A stretch of DNA of 63,778 nt, counting the filler, from Octopus bimaculoides (Eukaryota): the NCBI RefSeq assembly GCF_001194135.2. It is 8 parts of 8 records of this genome, joined end to end, with 100 filler letters (N's around TTAATTAATTAA, not from the genome) between each part and the next. Parts side by side here need not be neighbours in the genome. Positions count along the whole stretch, not along the records: positions 23,351 to 32,430 come from NC_069005.1; 7 more parts are not named here. The stretch is one strand, 5' to 3'. The position numbers and the translations under genes are program-made. Shown here in pieces: positions 23,351 through 32,430 of the stretch; position 1 is the first letter of the stretch; each line of letters starts with the position of its first letter. Under the pieces are notes generated by a model. It had not been told where the DNA came from and did no database searches. It worked only from the letters and a program-made list of their open reading frames with translations.

Positions 23351-23590
23351 GCTCTGGCAGGGGATGGTGGCGAACCCTGCTGTACTCTTTCACCACAACT
23401 TTCTCTCACTCTTACTTTCTGTTGTGCCTGTAATTCAAAGGGTCAGCCTCGTCACACTGTGTCATGCTGAATATCCCCAAGAACTACGTTAAGGGTACAC
23501 ATGTCTGTGGAGTGCTCAGCCACTTGCACGTTAATTTCACGAGCAGGCTGTTCCGTTGGTCAGATCAACTGGAACCCTCGACGTATTGTG

Positions 23591-24063
23591 TTGGGACAAA
23601 GCTGTGTTTAGTTTTAATTTCTTTGGTTCCACGACTCGATAGATCCTACCATACATCTCCATTGCCCTCACCCACATGCACAAGGATTTTGCGGCACCGG
23701 ACACACGACCAATAATATCAGGAGTGAAGTCTGCTTGGGAAACGTATTTACCAATTTTATTCAACACACGATCGCTGATGTTATCTTTGTCGAAGTTTAC
23801 CAACATATTGTGTGTGTATGATCATCATCATGATTTAACGTCTGCTTTCCATGCTAGCATGGGTTGGACGATTTGACTGAGGACTGGTGAAGCCAGATGG
23901 CAACACCAGGCTCCAATCTGATTTGGCAGAGTTTCTACAGCTGGATGCCCTTCCTAACGCCAACCACTCTGAGAGTGTAGTGGGTGCTTTTACGTGTCAC
24001 CCGCACGAAGGCCAGTTGAATAAACATTGTTGAATAAACTACGCATTCAGTTTTATGTACATC
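23591..24063 (-). pseudogene. Inverted partial copy of DNAH2 intron E-F (30007-30261) and exon F (from 30491)
   Basis: 23809-24063 is the reverse complement of 30007-30261. 23629-23803 is the reverse complement of 30491-30665. No mismatches seen by eye. The copy extends 38 nt further (EPKKLKLNTALSQ). It has no splice acceptor. Confidence 0.9.
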
Positions 24064-24145
24064 CATATTGTGGATGGTCAATGTCTAATATTTGTCCATT
24101 TTTTTTTTTTTTGATACTTTGTATTGATTTTATTTGCTTGTGTAG

Positions 24146-24285
24146 GTGAAGAATGCCCTGTCAGATTTGGCCAAAAAAGAAGGTTTGGAAGACACTCCTC
24201 AAAGTATTTTTGCTTTCCTCATTGACCGAGTACGTACCAACCTCCATGTGGTGATGTGTATGAGTCCTGTAGGAGAACCATTCCG
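24146..24285 (+). CDS. DNAH2: Dynein axonemal heavy chain 2, internal exon A (end of AAA4 region)
   Basis: tgtag| acceptor and |gtaag donor; VKNALSDLAKKEGLEDTPQSIFAFLIDRVRTNLHVVMCMSPVGEPF(R) matches the dynein RVxxNLHxVLCxSPxGxxFR motif; 140 nt, phase 0 to 2. Confidence 0.93.
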
Positions 24286-24609
24286 GTAAGGATTCTTCAA
24301 GGGAACACTTTCATTCTTTTTCATTTTTATGTTCACTTGGAAGTTCAATATTTTGTATACATGAGTGATTCTCAACCAAAGTCCGTATAACCCTTGAGGG
24401 TCTGTATAAGATTTTGTTCTTAAAACTTATCTGCAATAAATTGGTTGTACTTCTGCAATGCACTAAATATTTTAACGATTTTTTTAATACAATTCGTCAT
24501 CTTCATCATCATCATTTAACATCTGTTCTACATGCTGGCATGGGTTGGAAGGTTTGACAGGGGCTGGAAAGCCAGAAGATTGCACCAGGCTTCCTTGTCT
24601 ATTTTGGCA

Positions 24610-25098
24610 TTGATTACTCATTGCTGACCCTCTTTAATACTCATTATTTAATACTAACTGCTGAGCCTGTGCAATACTGTTTGTTGATTACTCAATGCTG
24701 AGCCACTTCATTACTCATCATTGAATGCTCATTGCTGATCCATTGTAATACTAAACATTGATTACTCATTGCTGAACCCCTCCAATGCCCATTACTTAAC
24801 AGTCATTGCTGAGCCAGCCCAATACTCATTTAGTATTCATTGCTGAGTCACTGTAATATTCATCATTGAATGCTCATTGCTGAGCCACTGTGATGCTGAT
24901 TGTTGATTGCTGAACCACTACAATACTTATTATTCAATACTCATTGCTGAGCCAGTGCAATACTCATTTAGTAATCACTGTTGTGCCTCTATAATACACA
25001 TCGTTGAATACTCATTACTGACCAACTGTAATACTTTTATTGAATACTCTTCAGTGATACTCATCCTTGAATAGTCACTGCCAAACCATTAATACTTA
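24610..25098. repeat. Degenerate minisatellite, about 14 units of about 37 bp
   Basis: Consensus is approximately ttgaatactcattgctgagccactgtaatactcatca. Confidence 0.85.
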
Positions 25099-25556
25099 GA
25101 AATTTTCAATGCCGCCAAGCAGTTCTTCCCATCTTCTAGCTCCACATCTCAAAGAATCTATTAAAAATATAGAACTGGATGTAACTCTGAAAAGTTAACT
25201 AAGAATAAACTGGAATCTCCAAGGGGGCAGGGATGGTTCTTGGAAGGTACAAATGCTCTAAAAGAAAGAAGCATGACAGAGAAGATGGAATAGTCCGACA
25301 GTCCAGTGACCCTGGGAAAATAGTTTGATGTTGAAGTTTCAACAGCCTACCCACACTGATTTAAGTGAACAAATATGTTTTATTTCTTTACTACCCACAA
25401 GGGGCTACACACAGAGGGGACAAACAAGAGTTGACCTCGGCGGAATTTGAACTCGGAACATAGCGGCAGACGAAATACTGCTAAGCATTTCGCCCGCCGT
25501 GCTAACGTTTCTGCCAGCTCACCGCCTTAAATATGTTTCATCTCTTTTATTTGCAG

Positions 25557-25689
25557 GAATCGCATTCGAATGTACCCAGCTTTTGTCAATTGTACAACGA
25601 TTGATTGGTTTAGCCACTGGCCACAAGATGCCCTTTTAGAAGTTGCTGACAAATACCTCGTTGATATGAAAACTTCAAACGAAGAAGAG
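25557..25689 (+). CDS. DNAH2: DNAH2 internal exon B
   Basis: ttgcag| and |gttagt; NRIRMYPAFVNCTTIDWFSHWPQDALLEVADKYLVDMKTSNEEE (dynein YPALVNCTTIDWF..WP motif); 133 nt, phase 2 to 0. Confidence 0.95.
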
Positions 25690-25749
25690 GTTAGTGCTCC
25701 ATTTATTTACTCAGAGACTGAGTTGATTGGTGGCATTTAGTAGTCAAAT

Positions 25750-26173
25750 ACCTTATAGTATTCAAACTGGCATATCAGGCCCAGATATTTTGTTTTATGG
25801 TCAAATTGATCTGATCAGGCCTCTCACTCTACAATGTCATTCTAAAAATAAATAATCACATTATTAAAAACCTCAAAGTTATAAGATAATGTGTGATTAA
25901 TTTAAATTAATGTGGATAAATAAGAATTACATTTGACAGGGTAATATGAATGCTAAAGGGTTAAACCAGCCATGTCTGGCTCAAATATTCTACTTGTTTT
26001 ATGTTTAAACTGACCAGATCTCACTCCTTGCACTTACCCTACAATGTCATTCTAAGAATAAACAATCACATCATTGAAATCTCAAAGCTATAAGATAATG
26101 CAGGATTAACTTAAAGCTATGTGAATAAAGAAGCATTACATTTGACAGAATAATCTGATGGCTTAAAGGATTA
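25750..26173. mobile_element. Two tandem copies of the piggyBac-like MITE
   Basis: Both carry ctacaatgtcattcta...tacatttgacag..gctaaagggttaa. Confidence 0.65.
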
Positions 26174-26589
26174 AATGAATCTGATTGAAATATGAGGTGT
26201 CAAGGAAGCATTTCTGCTCAACCTGTTAGAACAAGCAGCCACATTTTTCCTCAAATCATACTTTGGTATCTTAACAAAAGAGAACTTATATTAGATCAGT
26301 GGTCACCAACCTTTTTTGCACCATGGGCCAGTTTCATGCAAGACAGTTTTTTTTCACAGATCAGGGAATCATGCACAGAACAAAATACAATAAAGAGCAT
26401 AATATATGATTTTTACACATCTATTTAGCCTAGAAAAATGATGATTAACAAATCATCGATGGTGCAAATAGCTGGTGAGTTGGATAAAAATTCATTATTT
26501 GCAATGGAAGTAGTATATTTGCTCAAGGAAGCAGAAATCTGAGTTAGCAATTCCACCACCACTGTTGGATGCTTTCCATATGCTACTGA

Positions 26590-26980
26590 TATACTTCCCT
26601 GCAGATGGTTGGTATTCTGGGAAGGAAGGAAGGACATAGGCAACCCTTTTCAAGAAGCGGACCACATGAGATATGACTCGTCATCAAATGAACCAGGCTA
26701 CCAAAAAAATAATTCAAAGTAATTTTTTTTTTGTTTGGTGGGCCATTCAGGAAGTTCCATGGGTCACAGTTTGTCTTTGACTGGTTTTGTGTGAGGGCCT
26801 TTGAGTATGGATTTTGTGCACCAATTCAGAAGGACAGTGGTTATTGTAATAGCAGTAGTGATAGAGGAAGTGAGGGGTGATACATCTGTGAGTAACATGG
26901 ATTGTAGTTGGATAGAGATGGCCTTCTGTTATAGAAGTGATTCATTGTGAATCAGCTGGGTGACCTTCTTTTAGAAAGTG
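26590..26980 (-). mobile_element. CR1/L2-type LINE reverse transcriptase C-terminal fossil
   Basis: Frameshifted KKVTQLI..LQSM..DVSPL / LYHYCYYNNHCPSELV / SFLPR resembles the LQPL.HRRDVASL.LFYRYY.G.CS.EL...SFFPRT tail of CR1/L2 ORF2. Confidence 0.55.
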
Positions 26981-27287
26981 ATTTAACTATTTCTATACCA
27001 CCCCACCTGAGACCACCCTTGACTCTGTGACACAAAGATTTGAAGCAACCCAAATTAATAATGACAAAAATGTTATATAATTTCTTCATTATTTTCACAA
27101 TTAATTTAGATAAAGGCAGTATATTTTAACAGAAATATGGTAACGAAAGGGTGAAAAATGACAAAGTTATTTCACTTTCACTAAATTCTTTGTTATTTTC
27201 AAAATTAATTGAAGCAAAGGTAATGTATTCCAACAGAAATTTGGTAACAAAAATGTTAAAGGATCCAACAATCTTCTCTTTCTACAG

Positions 27288-27433
27288 GAAAAACTGAAAC
27301 ACAACATTGCCAAGATGTTCTCTCAGATACATAAATCAGTCTTTGACTATTCGGCTCGAATGACAGCTGAACTAAAGAGACACAACTATGTGACACCAAC
27401 TAATTACTTGGAGCTTGTTTCAGGTTATAAACT
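27288..27433 (+). CDS. DNAH2: DNAH2 internal exon C
   Basis: ctacag| and |gtacgt; EKLKHNIAKMFSQIHKSVFDYSARMTAELKRHNYVTPTNYLELVSGYK (dynein RHNYVTPTNYLEL motif); 146 nt, phase 0 to 2. Confidence 0.95.
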
Positions 27434-27536
27434 GTACGTATTCTTCAAAAACATTTAACTGTTTCGTTACTGTTCTCTGTAAAACTCTTGGTACAAGACC
27501 AACATTTACTTGGGATGAGTATAGAGTCAAACTGAG

Positions 27537-27584
<48 letters not shown>

Positions 27585-27589
27585 TCTTT

Positions 27590-28100
27590 CTACTGGAAAC
27601 ACAAGGCCTCAAATTTGGAGTAAGAGATTAAGTCAATTACATTGACCCCAGTGCATAACTGGCATTTATTTAATCAAACCTGAAAGGATGAAAGGCAAAG
27701 TCAACCTCAGCAGAATTTGAACTCAGAACATAAGGACGGACGAACTACCAATAAGCATTTTGTCCAACACGCACACATAGAGACATACACACACACACTG
27801 GCACATAGACTCACATGTAAACATACACAAGTATATACACTCTTGCAGACACACGCACACACATACAGACGTGGCAGCGAGCTGGCAGAAACGTTAGCAC
27901 GCCGGGCGAAATGCTTAGCGGTATTTCGTCTACCACTACGTTCTGAGTTCAAATTCCGCCGAGGTCGACTCTGCCTTTCATCCTTTCGGGGTCGATTAAA
28001 TAAGTACCAGTTACGCACTGGGGTCGGTATAATCGACTTAATCTGTTTGTCTGTCCTTGTTTGTCCCCTCTGTGTGTAGCCCCTTGTGGGTTGTAAAGAA
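27590..28100. mobile_element. SINE family 2, two copies in opposite orientation; further copies near 4720, 25390, 49340, 53760, 54010, 62780, 63580
   Basis: gagctggcagaaacgttagcacgccgggcgaaatgcttagc..ctgagttcaaattccgccgaggtcgac..cctttcatcctttcggggtcg. Confidence 0.8.
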
Positions 28101-28255
28101 ATAACACACTTACGCATGGATACATACAGACACGCTCACACAAGAACATTCATAGACATAGTCTCTCTCTCATTCACTCACACGCACGCATGCACACACA
28201 CACACACACACACACACGAACACAGAAGTTCACACAAAAACGTCCACTGACATAG

Positions 28256-28302
<47 letters not shown>

Positions 28303-28410
28303 GACGTGTGCACACACATGAACACATACACATGTTCACACAAAAATATCCACAGACAGCCTCTCACACACTTTTTTTTAAAAGTTAGTTTTCGTTGTTA
28401 ATTCTTGTAG

Positions 28411-28621
28411 ATTGTTGCTTGAAAAAAAGAAAGAACTTGGTGATGCTGCCAACAAACTTAAAAATGGTCTCAGTAAAATTGATGAGACACGGGAGAAGGT
28501 GCAGAAAATGTCTGTGGAATTGGATGAAGACAAAATAAAAGTGGCCCAGGTACAGCAGCAATGCGACGAGTATTTGTCGGTGCTGTTCCAACAAAAGAAA
28601 GAAGCGGACGACCAGCAGAAG
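28411..28621 (+). CDS. DNAH2: DNAH2 internal exon D (start of stalk coiled coil)
   Basis: ttgtag| and |gtaaac; LLLEKKKELGDAANKLKNGLSKIDETREKVQKMSVEL...EADDQQK; 211 nt, phase 2 to 0. Confidence 0.95.
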
Positions 28622-28670
28622 GTAAACTTTTTGAAATTGTTCAGTGTATGATACACATTCCCAATTTTAA

Positions 28671-29276
28671 TTCTATATTTAAGAGATGAGGAATTATTTA
28701 CATTATTTACAATTGACAGATATTTGTCCTCATCTTGTTTGTTGTTAACACAACGTTTCTGCTGATATACCTTCCAGCCTTCATCAGGTGTTTTGGGGAA
28801 ATTTCGATCCTGGGTTCTCATTCCTGAAGTATTTTTCAATGATGTTGTTGTTGTTCAGGTCACTGCCTGGAATCGAACTCAGAATCTTGAAGTTAGTAGC
28901 CCGCGCTCTTAACCACTACGCCATATGCCCGTTGGCAATTATGGAGTGAATTTTTAGGGCTTATAAATCTTATATTTTCCTATCCTTCCTTAATACCGGT
29001 TCCCATATGCTACTCATATCTGTACTCGGTCTGCTTAGGAGGTTTTTGTGTCCTAGCGTATGTGCTGCTTCTTTTAGTTTTCATATTTTCCAGTGGTATT
29101 CTCTGTCTATTATTTTAACTTCATCCCACAGGGGGAGGTGGTCTCCCTTTTTCCATACATGATCAGCTCTGAAGGCTGGAGGGGGTATATCAGCCAAAAC
29201 GTTGTGCTAATAACAAACAAGATGAGGACAAATATCCGTCAATTGTAAATAAAGTAAATAATTCCCAATTTTGTTT
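28671..29276 (-). mobile_element. 5'-truncated Penelope-like retroelement with inverted 5' pLTR
   Basis: 29167-28970 reads ADHVWKKGDHLPLWDEVKIIDREYHWKI*KLKEAAHTLGHKNLLSRPSTDMSSIWEPVLRKDRKI*, a GIY-YIG endonuclease C-terminus typical of PLEs; about 100-bp inverted repeats at 28690-28787 and 29168-29276. Confidence 0.8.
28747..28792 (-). ncRNA. Minimal hammerhead motif in the PLE 3' pLTR
   Basis: AACAC-CUGAUGA-A-GGCUG(GAAGGUAUAU)CAGC-A-GAAA-CG-UU^-GUGUU; a more decayed inverted copy lies at 29165-29208. Confidence 0.6.
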
Positions 29277-29709
29277 TTCAACCATTAGAGTAATTTGGGA
29301 CTCATGAAAGAAAAGGTAAGTAAAATCACATGCAGGTGATGGTACCATTTAAAAAGCTCTCCTGCTGGTGCTGCATAAATGCACCCATGCCAGTGACATG
29401 TAAAAGGCACCCAGCACACTCTTAAGGGGTTGGTATTAAGAAGGGCATCCAGCTATAGAAACCATGCCACAACAGACAGTTGGAGCCTGGACAGCTCTCT
29501 GCCAGCCAGCTCCATGTCAAACGATGATGATGATGAAAGCTTTGTCTTACTCAGAATGTCTGAGACAAGGGCTAAATTAAAACTCTGAAAACAGACGTTG
29601 GCATTTAAGACAAACCTTATGAAAATGCTTTGGACAGACGAAGGGTTAATCCATCCTGTGTTTGTTGTTTGTTAATCTTTACTAATCCTCTCTCTCTCTG
29701 TTATTACAG

Positions 29710-29968
29710 TTTGTTGCCCAGAAAAGTGAGAGAATATCTGAAGAAGAAATTAAATGCAAGCACATGGCCGACCTTGCCCAGCAGGATCTTAGCGAAGCTA
29801 TGCCTGCCCTTGAAGAGGCTATGTTAGCTCTGGAAGCCCTAAACAAGAAGGATATTGGTGAGATTAAATCGTATGGTCGGCCCCCAGCTCTTGTGGAGAA
29901 AGTAATGGAGGCTGTGATGATATTGAAGGGAAGCGAACCAAACTGGGCAGAAGCAAAACGGCAACTCG
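29710..29968 (+). CDS. DNAH2: DNAH2 internal exon E (stalk / microtubule-binding domain)
   Basis: ttacag| and |gttagt; ...DLSEAMPALEEAMLALEALNKKDIGEIKSYGRPPALVEKVMEAVMILKGSEPNWAEAKRQL, very close to vertebrate DNAH2 as I recall it; 259 nt, phase 0 to 1. Confidence 0.96.
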
Positions 29969-30467
29969 GTTAGTGTCAGTGATTTGGTTTGGTTTCTGTT
30001 TTTATAGATGTACATAAAACTGAATGCGTAGTTTATTCAACAATGTTTATTCAACTGGCCTTCGTGCGGGTGACACGTAAAAGCACCCACTACACTCTCA
30101 GAGTGGTTGGCGTTAGGAAGGGCATCCAGCTGTAGAAACTCTGCCAAATCAGATTGGAGCCTGGTGTTGCCATCTGGCTTCACCAGTCCTCAGTCAAATC
30201 GTCCAACCCATGCTAGCATGGAAAGCAGACGTTAAATCATGATGATGATCATACACACACATTTATATGTATGTATATACCCATACATATATATGTGTGT
30301 GTTTCAGTGTATTTGTCTCTCTGTCTATTTATGTTTCTGTTTACCTATTTAATTATCCCTCCATTTTATCTGTCTGTATATCTAATCGTCTAATTATCTT
30401 TAATGTTTTTCTCACTCATTTTGGTAAATGCATGAAGTACCTTTGTTTTCTCTTCTTTTGCGTTCAG

Positions 30468-30665
30468 GGGACCCCAACTTCATCAAGTCTTTGGTAAACT
30501 TCGACAAAGATAACATCAGCGATCGTGTGTTGAATAAAATTGGTAAATACGTTTCCCAAGCAGACTTCACTCCTGATATTATTGGTCGTGTGTCCGGTGC
30601 CGCAAAATCCTTGTGCATGTGGGTGAGGGCAATGGAGATGTATGGTAGGATCTATCGAGTCGTGG
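30468..30665 (+). CDS. DNAH2: DNAH2 internal exon F (MTBD); 3' end lost in N gap 30666-31165
   Basis: gttcag| acceptor; GDPNFIKSLVNFDKDNISDRVLNKIGKYVSQADFTPDIIGRVSGAAKSLCMWVRAMEMYGRIYRVV; in phase with exon E. Confidence 0.95.
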
Positions 30666-31165
30666 NNNNNNNNNNNNNNNNNNNNNNNNNNNNNNNNNNN
30701 NNNNNNNNNNNNNNNNNNNNNNNNNNNNNNNNNNNNNNNNNNNNNNNNNNNNNNNNNNNNNNNNNNNNNNNNNNNNNNNNNNNNNNNNNNNNNNNNNNNN
30801 NNNNNNNNNNNNNNNNNNNNNNNNNNNNNNNNNNNNNNNNNNNNNNNNNNNNNNNNNNNNNNNNNNNNNNNNNNNNNNNNNNNNNNNNNNNNNNNNNNNN
30901 NNNNNNNNNNNNNNNNNNNNNNNNNNNNNNNNNNNNNNNNNNNNNNNNNNNNNNNNNNNNNNNNNNNNNNNNNNNNNNNNNNNNNNNNNNNNNNNNNNNN
31001 NNNNNNNNNNNNNNNNNNNNNNNNNNNNNNNNNNNNNNNNNNNNNNNNNNNNNNNNNNNNNNNNNNNNNNNNNNNNNNNNNNNNNNNNNNNNNNNNNNNN
31101 NNNNNNNNNNNNNNNNNNNNNNNNNNNNNNNNNNNNNNNNNNNNNNNNNNNNNNNNNNNNNNNNN

Positions 31166-31487
31166 GGGCAAGTGTCTTCTACTATAGCCTTGGGCTGACC
31201 AAAGCCTTGTGAGTGGATTTGGTAGATGGAAACTGAAAGAAGCCCGTCGTATATATGTATATATATGTATGTGTGTGTATATGTTTGTGTGTCTGTGTTT
31301 GTTCCCCCAACATCGCTTGACAACCGATGGTGGTGTGTTTACGTCCCCGTAACTTAGTGGTTCGGCAAAAGAGACCGATAGAATAAGTACTAGGCTTCCA
31401 AAGAATAAGTCCTGGGGTCAATTTGCTCGACTAAAAGGCGGTGCTCCAGCATGGCCGCAGTCAAATGACTGAAACGAGCAAAAGAGC
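31166..31487 (+). mobile_element. SINE family 1 in DNAH2 intron F-G
   Basis: Core and tail match. Confidence 0.85.
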
Positions 31488-31931
31488 AACCCTGTAGCAT
31501 TTAAGCAGGCTATATCCAGCTAAAATATTCTACCTGTTTTATACTCAAATTGGCCAGATTCAACCTCTCACACCTACCCTACAATGTCATTCTAAAGATA
31601 AATGAGCACATCATCGAAATCTCCAAGCCATAAGATAATATCCGGTTCATTCAAAACAATGGGAATAAATAAACAATACATTTGTAGGAATAATGTGATT
31701 GCTAAAGGGTTAAATATTATTAGGGATTGCATAAAAAAAATCAAACCATTTTGTGTATTGTAGAAGCAGAAGTAATTTATTACGCATAGATTTTAACAAC
31801 AAAATCTTATATGGAAACCCAAGGGTTATATGGACCCTAGTTGAGGATCATTGGTTTAATTAAACATTTGTACATCTAATCACGCACACTGCAAACGTCT
31901 TGTGACCCTGCGAATGTTTATTATTTTCCAG

Positions 31932-32096
31932 GTGGAAGCCAACATGTTGGCACTGCGTAACCAATATGACGAAAGAATTGCTCAGAAAGAGGAGCTGAGA
32001 CTAAAGGCAGAACGTACTGAAATGATGTTGGACAGGGCCCATAAACTGGTGTCTGGTTTGGCCGGAGAGAAAGTTAGGTGGGAAGAAACAGTAACA
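31932..32096 (+). CDS. DNAH2: DNAH2 internal exon G (stalk return coil)
   Basis: ttccag| and |gtgagt; VEANMLALRNQYDERIAQKEELRLKAERTEMMLDRAHKLVSGLAGEKVRWEETVT (dynein LVSGLAGEKxRW motif); 165 nt. Confidence 0.95.
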
Positions 32097-32381
32097 GTGA
32101 GTATTATTATTATTATTATTGTTCAGTAGTTTTATTTTTATAACGTGCTTTCACTTCACTACCGAACGCAGCTCTGTGTGCCTTGGGTATGTGCTGTGGT
32201 TTGCTGTGGTGCTCTTATGTTTACTGTATTGAAAGTGTTTTGCGTAGGATGTGTGCAGTGCCCAGTAGTGCAATTTTCTGTATGTTATATATATTTGTAA
32301 GTCCTGGTGTTTTTGTTATGTATTTGTCTGAATATTTTTTTATTATACCTAAGGCACCTACTATGATACGAATTGCTTCTG

Positions 32382-32416
<35 letters not shown>

Positions 32417-32430
32417 CATCATCATCATTA

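What the first reader, a model, noticed from the sequence alone, without database searches (positions are those of the whole stretch)
23584..24072. Inverted copy of DNAH2 intron and exon pieces with the same motif at all three junctions
Seen: 23809-24063 is the reverse complement of 30007-30261, and 23591-23803 is the reverse complement of exon F from 30491. The 229 bp between them (including the splice acceptor) are skipped. TATTGTG (23584), CATATTGTG (23804) and CATATTGTG (24064) mark every junction, with 4-nt TGTG microhomology at one and a truncated SINE at the left end. The copy supplies 13 codons (EPKKLKLNTALSQ) missing from the N gap in the real exon. Inference: serial template switching (MMBIR or Pol-theta-type templated insertion) that returned twice to the same 9 bp, or two TSD-flanked insertions of pre-mRNA-derived DNA at one site. 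Full identity implies a very recent, perhaps polymorphic event.
Basis: partly seen in the sequence, partly recalled or inferred. Interest (0 to 1): 0.7.

Follow-up and report, generated by a model that had tools for sequence, protein, structure and literature searches.

The report
Inverted DNAH2 fragments inserted in intron
An intron of a mollusc dynein gene (DNAH2) holds a backwards, perfect copy of two pieces taken 6-7 kb further down the same gene, stitched with the same short motif at every joint; this looks like one DNA-copying accident that jumped between templates, a known kind of event, and its reality cannot be checked without the sequencing reads.

Summary
23809-24063 is the exact reverse complement of 30007-30261 (255 nt). 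23629-23803 is the exact reverse complement of 30491-30665 (175 nt), and that match stops only at a 500-N gap. The next 38 nt of the copy encode EPKKLKLNTALSQ, real DNAH2 exon sequence hidden by the gap. TATTGTG occurs three times in the 9-kb piece, each time at a junction.

Best reading: one compound templated insertion, 73 nt upstream of exon A. A 3' end left the site twice to copy, in antisense, exon F and then an intronic repeat. Each time it returned to the same 7-9-nt pad, (CA)TATTGTG.

New support: the entry into the intron piece sits on CACA-TTT-ATATG, which is the pad with a 3-nt bulge (p about 0.007). The exit sits on the first TATA met. A strong (CA)n/(TG)n hairpin starts at the entry.

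DNA-templated switching (MMBIR-like) is favoured (0.4). An RNA-templated, reverse-transcriptase version (0.22), an assembly artefact (0.2) and two separate insertions (0.07) remain possible.

No other assembly, reads or sister-species sequence could be reached. It is a new member of a known kind, of moderate interest. Possible consequences: 213-bp and 255-bp perfect duplexes within the pre-mRNA, and a probably spurious 89-aa gene model.

The parts
23351..23583 (.). Left flank of the insertion. It ends ...CCCTCGACG.
   Evidence: No second copy in the piece; no tRNA; no Rfam hit. From memory only, it resembles a common octopus repeat. That is a lead, not a test.
23584..23590 (+). Motif copy 1: TATTGTG, preceded by CG. 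It is the 3' end of the priming strand, or the left copy of the target-site duplication.
23591..23803 (-). Antisense copy of an internal fragment of DNAH2 exon F. It corresponds to source 30491 to about 30703. It starts 23 nt inside the exon and ends about 51 nt before the exon's expected end.
   Evidence: 175 nt are identical to 30491-30665. The remaining 38 nt encode EPKKLKLNTALSQ, which is conserved. Relatives continue with 17 more residues, LKEKQDALADAKAKLAEV, before the intron.
23804..23812 (+). Motif copy 2: CATATTGTG. Its last 4 nt (TGTG) are shared with the intron piece.
   Evidence: The 5 nt CATAT come from neither adjoining source end.
23809..24063 (-). Antisense copy of the intronic repeat unit at 30007-30261.
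   Evidence: 255/255 identical.
24064..24072 (+). Motif copy 3: CATATTGTG. It is the resident landing pad, or the right copy of the target-site duplication. The right flank GATGGTC... follows.
   Evidence: A 7-nt direct repeat flanking a segment has a chance of about 2e-4.
24146..24285 (+). DNAH2 exon A. Its acceptor lies 73 nt downstream of the insertion.
30001..30006 (+). TTTATA direct repeat on the left of the source unit. It contains the first TATA met when copying leaves the unit.
   Evidence: (6-nt flanking repeat, p about 7e-4).
30007..30261 (+). Source of the intron piece: a 255-nt unit in the intron between exons E and F. Its 3' 200 nt belong to a repeat family with a (GAT)n tail.
   Evidence: Two other copies of the family are 83-84% alike over the 52-61 nt stretches that match, at 24503-24563 and 29425-29476. 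No A or B box.
30253..30302 (+). (CA)n...(TG)n hairpin. The entry breakpoint 30261/30262 lies in its 5' arm. CACA-TTT-ATATG at 30258-30269 is the pad with a 3-nt bulge.
   Evidence: dG -18.7 kcal/mol, z -4.4. Bulged match p about 0.007.
30262..30490 (+). The 229 nt skipped by the copy: the rest of the intron, the acceptor, and the first 23 nt of exon F.
   Evidence: It is 31% G+C and holds five T-runs of 4 or more.
30491..30665 (+). The visible part of the source of the exon piece (exon F starts at 30468).
30666..31165 (.). A 500-N assembly gap. It hides the last 89 nt or so of exon F, its donor site, and the source side of junction 1.
23537..23806 (-). An 89-aa ORF that starts at the ATG inside motif copy 2, reads the exon F fragment and runs into the left flank. 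It exists as a UniRef protein and is probably a spurious gene model.
   Evidence: P0001, 100% identity; UniRef only, 1 member.

Best explanation
This is one compound templated insertion in the DNAH2 intron, 73 nt upstream of exon A, made by serial template switching guided by microhomology.

Reading the window's + strand as the growing strand:
1. A 3' end at ...CGACG(TATTGTG) left the site.
2. It copied 213 nt of exon F in antisense (about 30703 down to 30491).
3. It came back and filled the short pad CATATTGTG, stopping at the 5' end of the resident strand (GATGG...).
4. It left again and landed on the source where the + strand reads CACA-TTT-ATATG, at the foot of a (CA)n/(TG)n hairpin.
5. 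It copied 255 nt (30261 down to 30007) and left at the first TATA.
6. It filled the pad a last time and was sealed.

I think the template was most likely DNA of the same chromosome or its sister, during replication-associated break repair (MMBIR/FoSTeS-like).

Shown: the segments, their order, orientation and identity, the motif at all three joints, and the homologies at the entry and exit of the intron piece. Inferred: that it was a single event, the direction of synthesis, the polymerase, and that the copy is real in the animal.
For: - Both pieces come from one 697-nt source stretch. They keep its order and orientation and are 430/430 identical where comparable.
- All three occurrences of TATTGTG in the piece are at junctions.
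- The two full 9-mers are followed by different sequence. Both stop at the same base, as expected if a fixed gap is filled up to a resident 5' end.
- The entry into the intron piece sits on the pad's homologue CACA-TTT-ATATG at 30258-30269, p about 0.007.
- There is no TATA or ATAT inside 30007-30261. The first one in the direction of copying is 30003-30006, at the exit.
- A hairpin at 30253-30302 (dG -18.7, z -4.4) lies at the entry and inside the skipped stretch.
- A source 6.2-7.1 kb away in cis, copied in inverted orientation, is typical of replication-based switching (established knowledge of FoSTeS/MMBIR).
- No RNA hallmark is present: no tail, no splice junction, and exon breakpoints 23 nt and about 51 nt inside the exon.
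- A shared 7-9-mer is too short to mislead a k-mer or overlap assembler (inference).
Against: - No reads, second assembly or sister species could be examined, so reality is untested.
- The source adjoins a 500-N gap, and the contig ends inside the duplicated exon segment. The assembler therefore had trouble here.
- Microhomology is absent where copying leaves the exon piece (CCAA|CATAT against source CCAA|AGACT). It is unknown at junction 1 because of the gap.
- The left motif is preceded by CG and the other two by CA. This needs an added assumption: a T at this CpG on the pad template, mismatch extension, or a later substitution.
- A perfect 7-bp flanking duplication is also what a staggered endonuclease cut would give.
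- Three visits to one pad are unusual for MMBIR.
Confidence: 0.4

Rival explanations
1. Same topology, but the templates were RNA and the polymerase a reverse transcriptase. One version is target-primed reverse transcription (TPRT) by a LINE (for example an RTE-class element) at a staggered nick with a 7-bp target-site duplication. The other is RNA-templated break repair. Either would use the unspliced DNAH2 pre-mRNA made at this very locus, with template jumps back to the overhang.
For: - A perfect 7-bp flanking duplication, chance about 2e-4.
- The + strand of the insert reads as cDNA of the host gene, and copying runs 3' to 5' along the transcript.
- The pad's TGTG is complementary to the ...CACACACA end of the repeat unit.
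- The source unit itself has TTTATA direct repeats, p about 7e-4.
- Expressed, apparently active RTE LINEs are reported in Octopus (PMC9115989).
- LINE reverse transcriptases make bi- and tripartite chimeras flanked by TSDs through template jumps (PMC2104539).
Against: - There is no poly(A) or element tail at the 3' end of the insert, which ends ...GTCCCAA inside an exon.
- There is no splice junction, and intron sequence is retained.
- Known chimeras are fused directly, without a copy of the TSD between the parts (PMC2104539).
- The 255-nt unit has no A or B box. Five T-runs lie between it and exon F, so a Pol III transcript covering both pieces is unlikely.
- That the organism is an octopus is my recollection and was not tested.
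Confidence: 0.22
2. Assembly, gap-closing or scaffolding artefact. The 489-bp block does not exist at 23584-24072 in the animal, or exists only in chimeric library molecules.
For: - The real exon F runs into a 500-N gap 38 nt before the end of the duplicated segment.
- Perfect identity is what polishing or a collapsed repeat would give.
- The only outside trace of the chimeric ORF is a single UniRef entry, which may come from the same assembly (its source is not shown to me). It was seen on no contig on record.
Against: - The block is not flanked by N.
- It is inverted, carries an internal 229-nt deletion, and has the same 7-9-mer at all three joints. Haplotig duplication or a misplaced contig would give none of these.
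- Homologies of 4-9 nt are too short to join k-mer or overlap graphs.
- The bulged homology at the landing site points to a polymerase, not software.
Confidence: 0.2
3. Two separate insertions at one hot spot. First the exon piece went in, with a 7-bp TSD (TATTGTG) and two untemplated bases (CA). Later the repeat unit went into the right-hand TSD copy, with a 9-bp TSD (CATATTGTG).
For: - It explains CG against CA with no extra assumption.
- Each piece is flanked by direct repeats.
- The repeat family is abundant, with 4 copies in 9 kb.
Against: - It requires two rare events at the same phosphodiester bond.
- It requires the second insert to be 100% identical to the copy lying 229 nt from the source of the first insert, whereas the other family copies match at only 83-84% over short stretches.
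- It does not explain the ATATG homology lying beyond the unit's end in the source.
Confidence: 0.07

Closest known systems
MMBIR / FoSTeS complex templated insertions (Lee, Carvalho and Lupski 2007; Hastings et al. 2009; cited from memory)
   Same: Several template switches in one event. Segments of tens to hundreds of bp are copied from nearby sequence in cis. Inverted orientation occurs. There is microhomology at joints, and secondary-structure-forming repeats lie at breakpoints.
   Different: Here the strand returned three times to the same 7-9 nt, leaving a copy of it at every joint and a TSD-like flanking duplication. One joint has no microhomology, and one cannot be read because of the gap.
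Polymerase theta end joining with templated insertions (PMC2895639; mismatch extension PMC3315306)
   Same: Repeated abortive copying of a few bases from the break's own flank. The result is reiterated flank motifs, minimal microhomology, and tolerance of a mismatched primer end (CG primed on CA).
   Different: By my recollection, TMEJ inserts are usually under about 50 nt and templated within tens to hundreds of bp of the break. Here 213 and 255 nt were copied from 6-7 kb away.
Chimeric retrocopies made by LINE reverse-transcriptase template jumps (U6-L1 type; tripartite chimera with a 14-bp TSD, PMC2104539; PMC4476161)
   Same: Two transcript-like pieces in the same orientation, flanked as a whole by a short direct repeat. 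The 5' part is a complete unit and the 3' part is a truncated fragment.
   Different: There is no poly(A) or LINE tail. The pieces are an unspliced intron segment and an internal exon fragment of one gene. A copy of the TSD sits between them, and they lie in the same gene as their source.
Templated-sequence insertion polymorphisms (Onozawa et al. 2014, PNAS; cited from memory, not retrieved)
   Same: Insertions of some tens to a few hundred bp are copied from distant genic sequence. Some have TSDs, and an RNA intermediate has been proposed.
   Different: Those are mostly single segments from other chromosomes. This one is bipartite and intragenic, with a reiterated junction motif.

Membership tests
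MMBIR/FoSTeS-type templated insertion | Inserted segments are copies of sequence elsewhere, often nearby in cis and in either orientation | tested here: met
   255/255 and 175/175 identity to sequence 6.2-7.1 kb downstream, inverted.
MMBIR/FoSTeS-type templated insertion | Microhomology (about 2-15 nt) at the switch points | tested here: inconclusive
   Entry into the intron piece: 4 nt exact, or 9 nt with a 3-nt bulge. Exit from the intron piece: ATA after one mismatch. Exit from the exon piece: none. Junction 1: the source side is hidden by the N gap.
MMBIR/FoSTeS-type templated insertion | Origin at a collapsed fork or one-ended break | not testable with these tools
   This would need population or experimental data.
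Pol theta (TMEJ) templated insertion | The insert is templated from the immediate flanks of the break and is usually short | tested here: not met
   Only the 7-9-nt motif copies fit. The 213-nt and 255-nt segments come from 6-7 kb away.
LINE-mediated chimeric retrocopy | Target-site duplication flanking the whole insert | tested here: met
   TATTGTG at 23584-23590 and at 24066-24072. Chance about 2e-4.
LINE-mediated chimeric retrocopy | Poly(A) or an element-specific tail at the 3' end next to the TSD | tested here: not met
   In sense orientation the insert ends ...GCTTTGTCCCAA, inside exon F.
LINE-mediated chimeric retrocopy | Parts fused directly and derived from mature RNAs | tested here: not met
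   A 9-mer copy of the target site lies between the parts. One part is intronic, and neither breakpoint of the exon part is a splice site.
Ordinary SINE insertion (for 23809-24063 alone) | Member of a repeat family, with its own flanking direct repeats | tested here: met
   The 3' 200 nt match two other copies in the piece, at 83-84% over 52-61 nt stretches. The unit is flanked by ATATG/CATATTGTG here and by TTTATA at the source.
Ordinary SINE insertion (for 23809-24063 alone) | Internal Pol III promoter (A and B boxes) | tested here: not met
   No A-box match, and no B-box-like match within 3 mismatches, in the 255-nt unit. No tRNA-like hit.
Assembly false duplication | The copy is bounded by gaps or contig ends and is colinear with its source | tested here: not met
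   The copy has no N at its borders, is inverted, and lacks 229 nt. Only the source touches a gap.
Assembly false duplication | No junction-spanning reads, and single-copy depth on the source | not testable with these tools
   No reads or independent assemblies were reachable.
DNAH2 (axonemal dynein heavy chain 2) orthologue, the host gene | Best match to DNAH2 rather than to other dynein heavy chains, across AAA4 and the stalk | tested here: met
   9fqr_D0 and 8j07_k9 score 540/534 bits, against 368 bits or less for other heavy chains. Pfam AAA_8 plus MT.

The most novel reading that the evidence does not exclude
If the insertion is real, it places perfect antisense copies of a coding exon (213 nt) and of a downstream intron segment (255 nt) inside the same pre-mRNA, bracketing exons A-E. 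It could therefore be a newborn editing-complementary sequence. It might drive ADAR hyper-editing of DNAH2 exon F, which matters if the animal is a coleoid cephalopod, where recoding is extensive (PMC5705066). It might also drive back-splicing of exons A-E into an 889-nt circular RNA, or exon skipping. That would show how template-switch accidents create long-range dsRNA structures in genes.
Probability: 0.12. Interest if true: 0.6.

Novelty: new member of a known kind. Interest (0 to 1): 0.35.

Why it matters
If it is real, this is an unusually legible record of a multi-step template-switch event. Every joint keeps a copy of the landing pad. The landing and leaving points on the donor can be matched to that pad, and a hairpin marks the skipped stretch.

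It also has practical uses. It recovers 13 codons of DNAH2 that the assembly gap hides. It flags an 89-aa database protein as a probable artefact of annotation. It predicts long intramolecular dsRNA in a ciliary motor gene, which can be tested by RNA-seq.

If it is an artefact, it is a warning about apparent duplications next to gaps in draft assemblies.

Tried and rejected
- **Chimeric 89-aa ORF.** An exact look-up found no contig on record. Its cluster has one member, from UniRef only. So there is no independent assembly.
- **Protein searches for cephalopod relatives or junction-bearing ORFs.** Exon F plus the junction gave nothing above 81% identity. The ORF across the left junction gave no candidates at all. 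A 430-aa query returned only distant fragments. So I could make no sister-species or empty-site comparison, and no nucleotide check of the sequence after 30703.
- **DNA scans with repeat-core patterns.** Metagenome contigs (twice) and genome contigs gave 0 hits. I therefore could not build a family consensus to fix the true ends of the 255-nt unit or of the left-flank repeat.
- **Pol III SINE transcript starting at 30007 as the template.** Rejected as unsupported. There are no A or B boxes, and five terminator-like T-runs lie before exon F.
- **Spliced or mis-spliced RNA.** Rejected. The skipped 229 nt start with TT and end with CT, and the real acceptor lies 23 nt inside the skipped stretch.
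- **Circular microDNA re-insertion.** Rejected. The copy is not permuted and lacks the TTTATA joint.
- **Tn5 or mate-pair adaptor origin of the 9-mer.** Rejected from memory of those adaptor sequences; no tool test was made.
- **The CATCCA/TGGATG palindrome at junction 3.** Judged not clearly beyond chance.
- **Rfam miRNA-like hits at 30245-30314.** These are far below the gathering scores and only reflect the (CA)n/(TG)n hairpin.

Full report
**1. What is in the sequence.**

The piece (23351-32430) carries seven + strand exons of an axonemal dynein heavy chain:

| Exon | Coordinates |
|---|---|
| A | 24146-24285 |
| B | 25557-25689 |
| C | 27288-27433 |
| D | 28411-28621 |
| E | 29710-29968 |
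| F | 30468 into the gap |
| G | 31932-32096 |

All have AG/GT borders and one continuous frame.
- The 375-aa conceptual product matches DNAH2 in PDB entries 9fqr and 8j07 (E about 1e-160, residues about 2854-3226). It matches DNAH2 far better than any other heavy chain.
- It contains the Pfam AAA_8 and MT-stalk domains.
- The best short-ORF relatives are molluscan, 78-81% identical, for example Magallana gigas DNAH2-like.
- From memory the interspersed repeats look like those of an octopus. I could not test this.

**2. The observation.**

- The repeat finder and an exact extension give two perfect inverted matches: 23809-24063 <-> 30007-30261 (255 nt) and 23629-23803 <-> 30491-30665 (175 nt).
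- The second match stops only because 30666-31165 is exactly 500 N.
- The copy runs on for 38 nt (23591-23628) in the exon F frame, giving EPKKLKLNTALSQ. Human DNAH2 has EPKRIRMNAALAQ at that place. Mollusc ORFs have EPKKQRLNAAMSQ.
- So the copy does reveal 13 codons that the gap hides.
- The relatives continue with 17 more residues before their intron, and exon G begins at the matching point. The copied fragment therefore starts 23 nt inside exon F and ends about 51 nt before its end. Neither end is a splice site.
- The 229 nt between the two source segments (30262-30490, including the acceptor) are absent from the copy.
- TATTGTG occurs three times in the piece and never on the other strand, against about 0.9 expected per strand. 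The three sites are the three junctions: 23584, 23806 and 24066. The last two are full CATATTGTG 9-mers starting at 23804 and 24064.
- The left copy is preceded by CG instead of CA.
- The insertion ends 73 nt upstream of the acceptor of exon A.

**3. Is it more than chance, and is it one thing?**

- A 7-nt direct repeat exactly flanking a segment of this size occurs with frequency about 2e-4 in this piece. A 6-nt repeat occurs with frequency about 7e-4.
- The two inserted pieces come from one 697-nt stretch of the same gene. They keep its order and orientation. They are identical at all 430 comparable positions.
- Other members of the intronic repeat family in the piece match it at only 83-84%, over 52-61 nt stretches.
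- Independent origin of the two pieces is therefore very unlikely.

**4. New anatomy at the donor.**

- (a) The donor unit 30007-30261 is itself bounded by TTTATA/TTTATA.
- (b) Immediately at its 3' end the + strand reads CACA-TTT-ATATG (30258-30269). This is the junction 9-mer CACAATATG with a 3-nt bulge. Such a match lies within 14 nt of a random point of the piece with p about 0.007.
- (c) Inside the 255-nt unit there is no TATA or ATAT. The first one met when copying leftwards is 30003-30006, right at the exit. After one mismatch, ATA is shared with the pad.
- (d) 30253-30302 folds into a (CA)n...(TG)n hairpin (dG -18.7 kcal/mol, z -4.4; no shuffle folds as well). Its 5' arm holds the entry breakpoint, and the rest of it lies in the skipped stretch. 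The weak miRNA-like Rfam hits there only reflect this hairpin.
- (e) The unit has no A or B box. Five T-runs of 4 or more lie between it and exon F.
- (f) Family similarity to the copy at 29340-29530 begins only near 30062. So the first 55 nt of the unit are not shown to be part of the repeat.

**5. Mechanism.**

Read on the window's + strand, the structure is:

primer ...CGACG-TATTGTG | exon F antisense | CA-TATTGTG | intron unit antisense | CA-TATTGTG-GATGG...

My reading:
- One 3' end made two excursions to the donor. It read the donor in one direction, exon F first and then the upstream intron.
- After each excursion it returned to the same short single-stranded pad.
- Each return filled the pad up to the 5' end of the resident strand. 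This explains why both fills stop at the same base.
- The second excursion was guided by the freshly made CATATTGTG end pairing with CACA(TTT)ATATG next to a fork-stalling hairpin. It ended at the first TATA, which shares homology with the pad.
- This also explains why the breakpoints coincide with the TTTATA repeats, without needing a SINE transcript.
- The CG/CA difference can be explained in several ways: both fills copied one template carrying T at this CpG; the first priming extended a mismatched CG on CA, which Pol theta can do (PMC3315306); or there was a 9-bp duplication and one later change.

I favour DNA templates in a replication-associated repair (MMBIR/FoSTeS-like), at 0.40.

**6. 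Rivals.**

An RNA-templated version (0.22) has the same topology.
- For: the 7-bp TSD-like duplication; the cDNA polarity of the insert; reported active RTE LINEs in Octopus (PMC9115989); known double template jumps of LINE reverse transcriptases that give TSD-flanked chimeras (PMC2104539).
- Against: no tail, no splice junction, no promoter boxes, and a pad copy between the parts.

Two separate insertions (0.07) would explain the CA neatly. But this needs two rare hits on one bond, and by coincidence a second insert identical to the copy lying 229 nt from the first insert's source.

An assembly artefact (0.20) cannot be excluded.
- For: the donor exon runs into a 500-N gap 38 nt short of the duplicated segment's end. 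Identity is uninformative after polishing. The only outside trace of the chimeric ORF is one UniRef entry with no contig on record.
- Against: the inverted, internally deleted block bounded by a motif and not flanked by N, together with the bulged homology at the landing site, looks like the work of a polymerase and not of software.

About 0.11 is left for explanations I have not thought of.

**7. Comparison with known kinds.**

It works like an MMBIR/FoSTeS complex insertion with Pol-theta-like reiteration of a flank motif.
- It fails the defining size and distance features of plain TMEJ insertions.
- It fails the tail, direct-fusion and mature-RNA features of LINE chimeras.
- It meets the cis-templated, multi-switch and inverted features of MMBIR. 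Microhomology is met at two joints, absent at one and unreadable at one.

I file it as a new member of that known kind. The triple reuse of one pad is its unusual trait.

**8. Consequences.**

- The pre-mRNA would contain perfect 213-bp and 255-bp duplexes spanning 6-7 kb and bracketing exons A-E.
- These could be substrates for ADAR editing of exon F, for back-splicing, or for exon skipping. This is speculative.
- The 89-aa minus-strand ORF begins at the ATG inside the middle motif. It reads 71 exon F codons and then runs into the flank. It exists as a database protein and is probably a spurious gene model.

**9. Limits.**

- All three homology searches, both metagenome scans and one of the two genome-contig scans gave no cephalopod sequence.
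- So there is no empty site, no read support, no family consensus and no view of the donor side of junction 1.
- The verdict rests on internal sequence logic.

Noticed in passing
window 28690-29265: A 576-bp foldback or MITE-like element in the intron between exons D and E. It has 82-nt terminal inverted repeats that are 93% complementary (28690-28771 / 29184-29265). Its interior looks tRNA-like on the reverse strand (GGAATCGAACTC...). CCCAATTTT occurs near both ends (28660 and 29264).
   Followed up: partly
window 24609-25049: A tandem array of about 12 copies of a 37-nt unit, with a 138-nt higher-order period at 76% identity. It directly abuts a 5'-truncated copy of the same repeat family as the donor unit (24491-24608, minus orientation).
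   Followed up: no
window 25376-25526 and 27873-28108; also 27622-27765 / 27904-28047: Inverted pairs of another SINE-like family, 82-96% complementary. One pair brackets exons B and C. They are further candidates for intramolecular dsRNA or back-splicing in this gene.
   Followed up: no
window 30666-31165: An assembly gap of exactly 500 N. It removes about 89 nt of exon F, about 30 codons of which 13 are recoverable from the inverted copy, together with the donor site. Any gene model here will lack about 17-30 residues of the dynein stalk.
   Followed up: partly
window 25823-26174 and 31501-31714: A third repeat family, present as two adjacent direct copies (about 210 nt apart) and a third copy 5.5 kb downstream. 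The copies are 75-87% identical and all in the same orientation.
   Followed up: no
window 24337-24483 and 31733-31879: An old inverted repeat pair, 147 nt and 71% complementary, lying in the introns after exon A and before exon G.
   Followed up: no
window 24060-24076: The right junction forms a small palindrome, CATCCA-TATTG-TGGATG. It is made of donor, filler and flank bases. It is probably chance (roughly 1/256 for the donor/flank part).
   Followed up: partly
window 27538-27584, 28175-28342, 32102-32123, 32383-32430: Pure (ATA)15 and (TTA)n microsatellites, and long CA/TC tracts, lie in the introns. The tracts next to exon G's donor (32102-) and at the end of the piece are of the same ATT type.
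   Followed up: no
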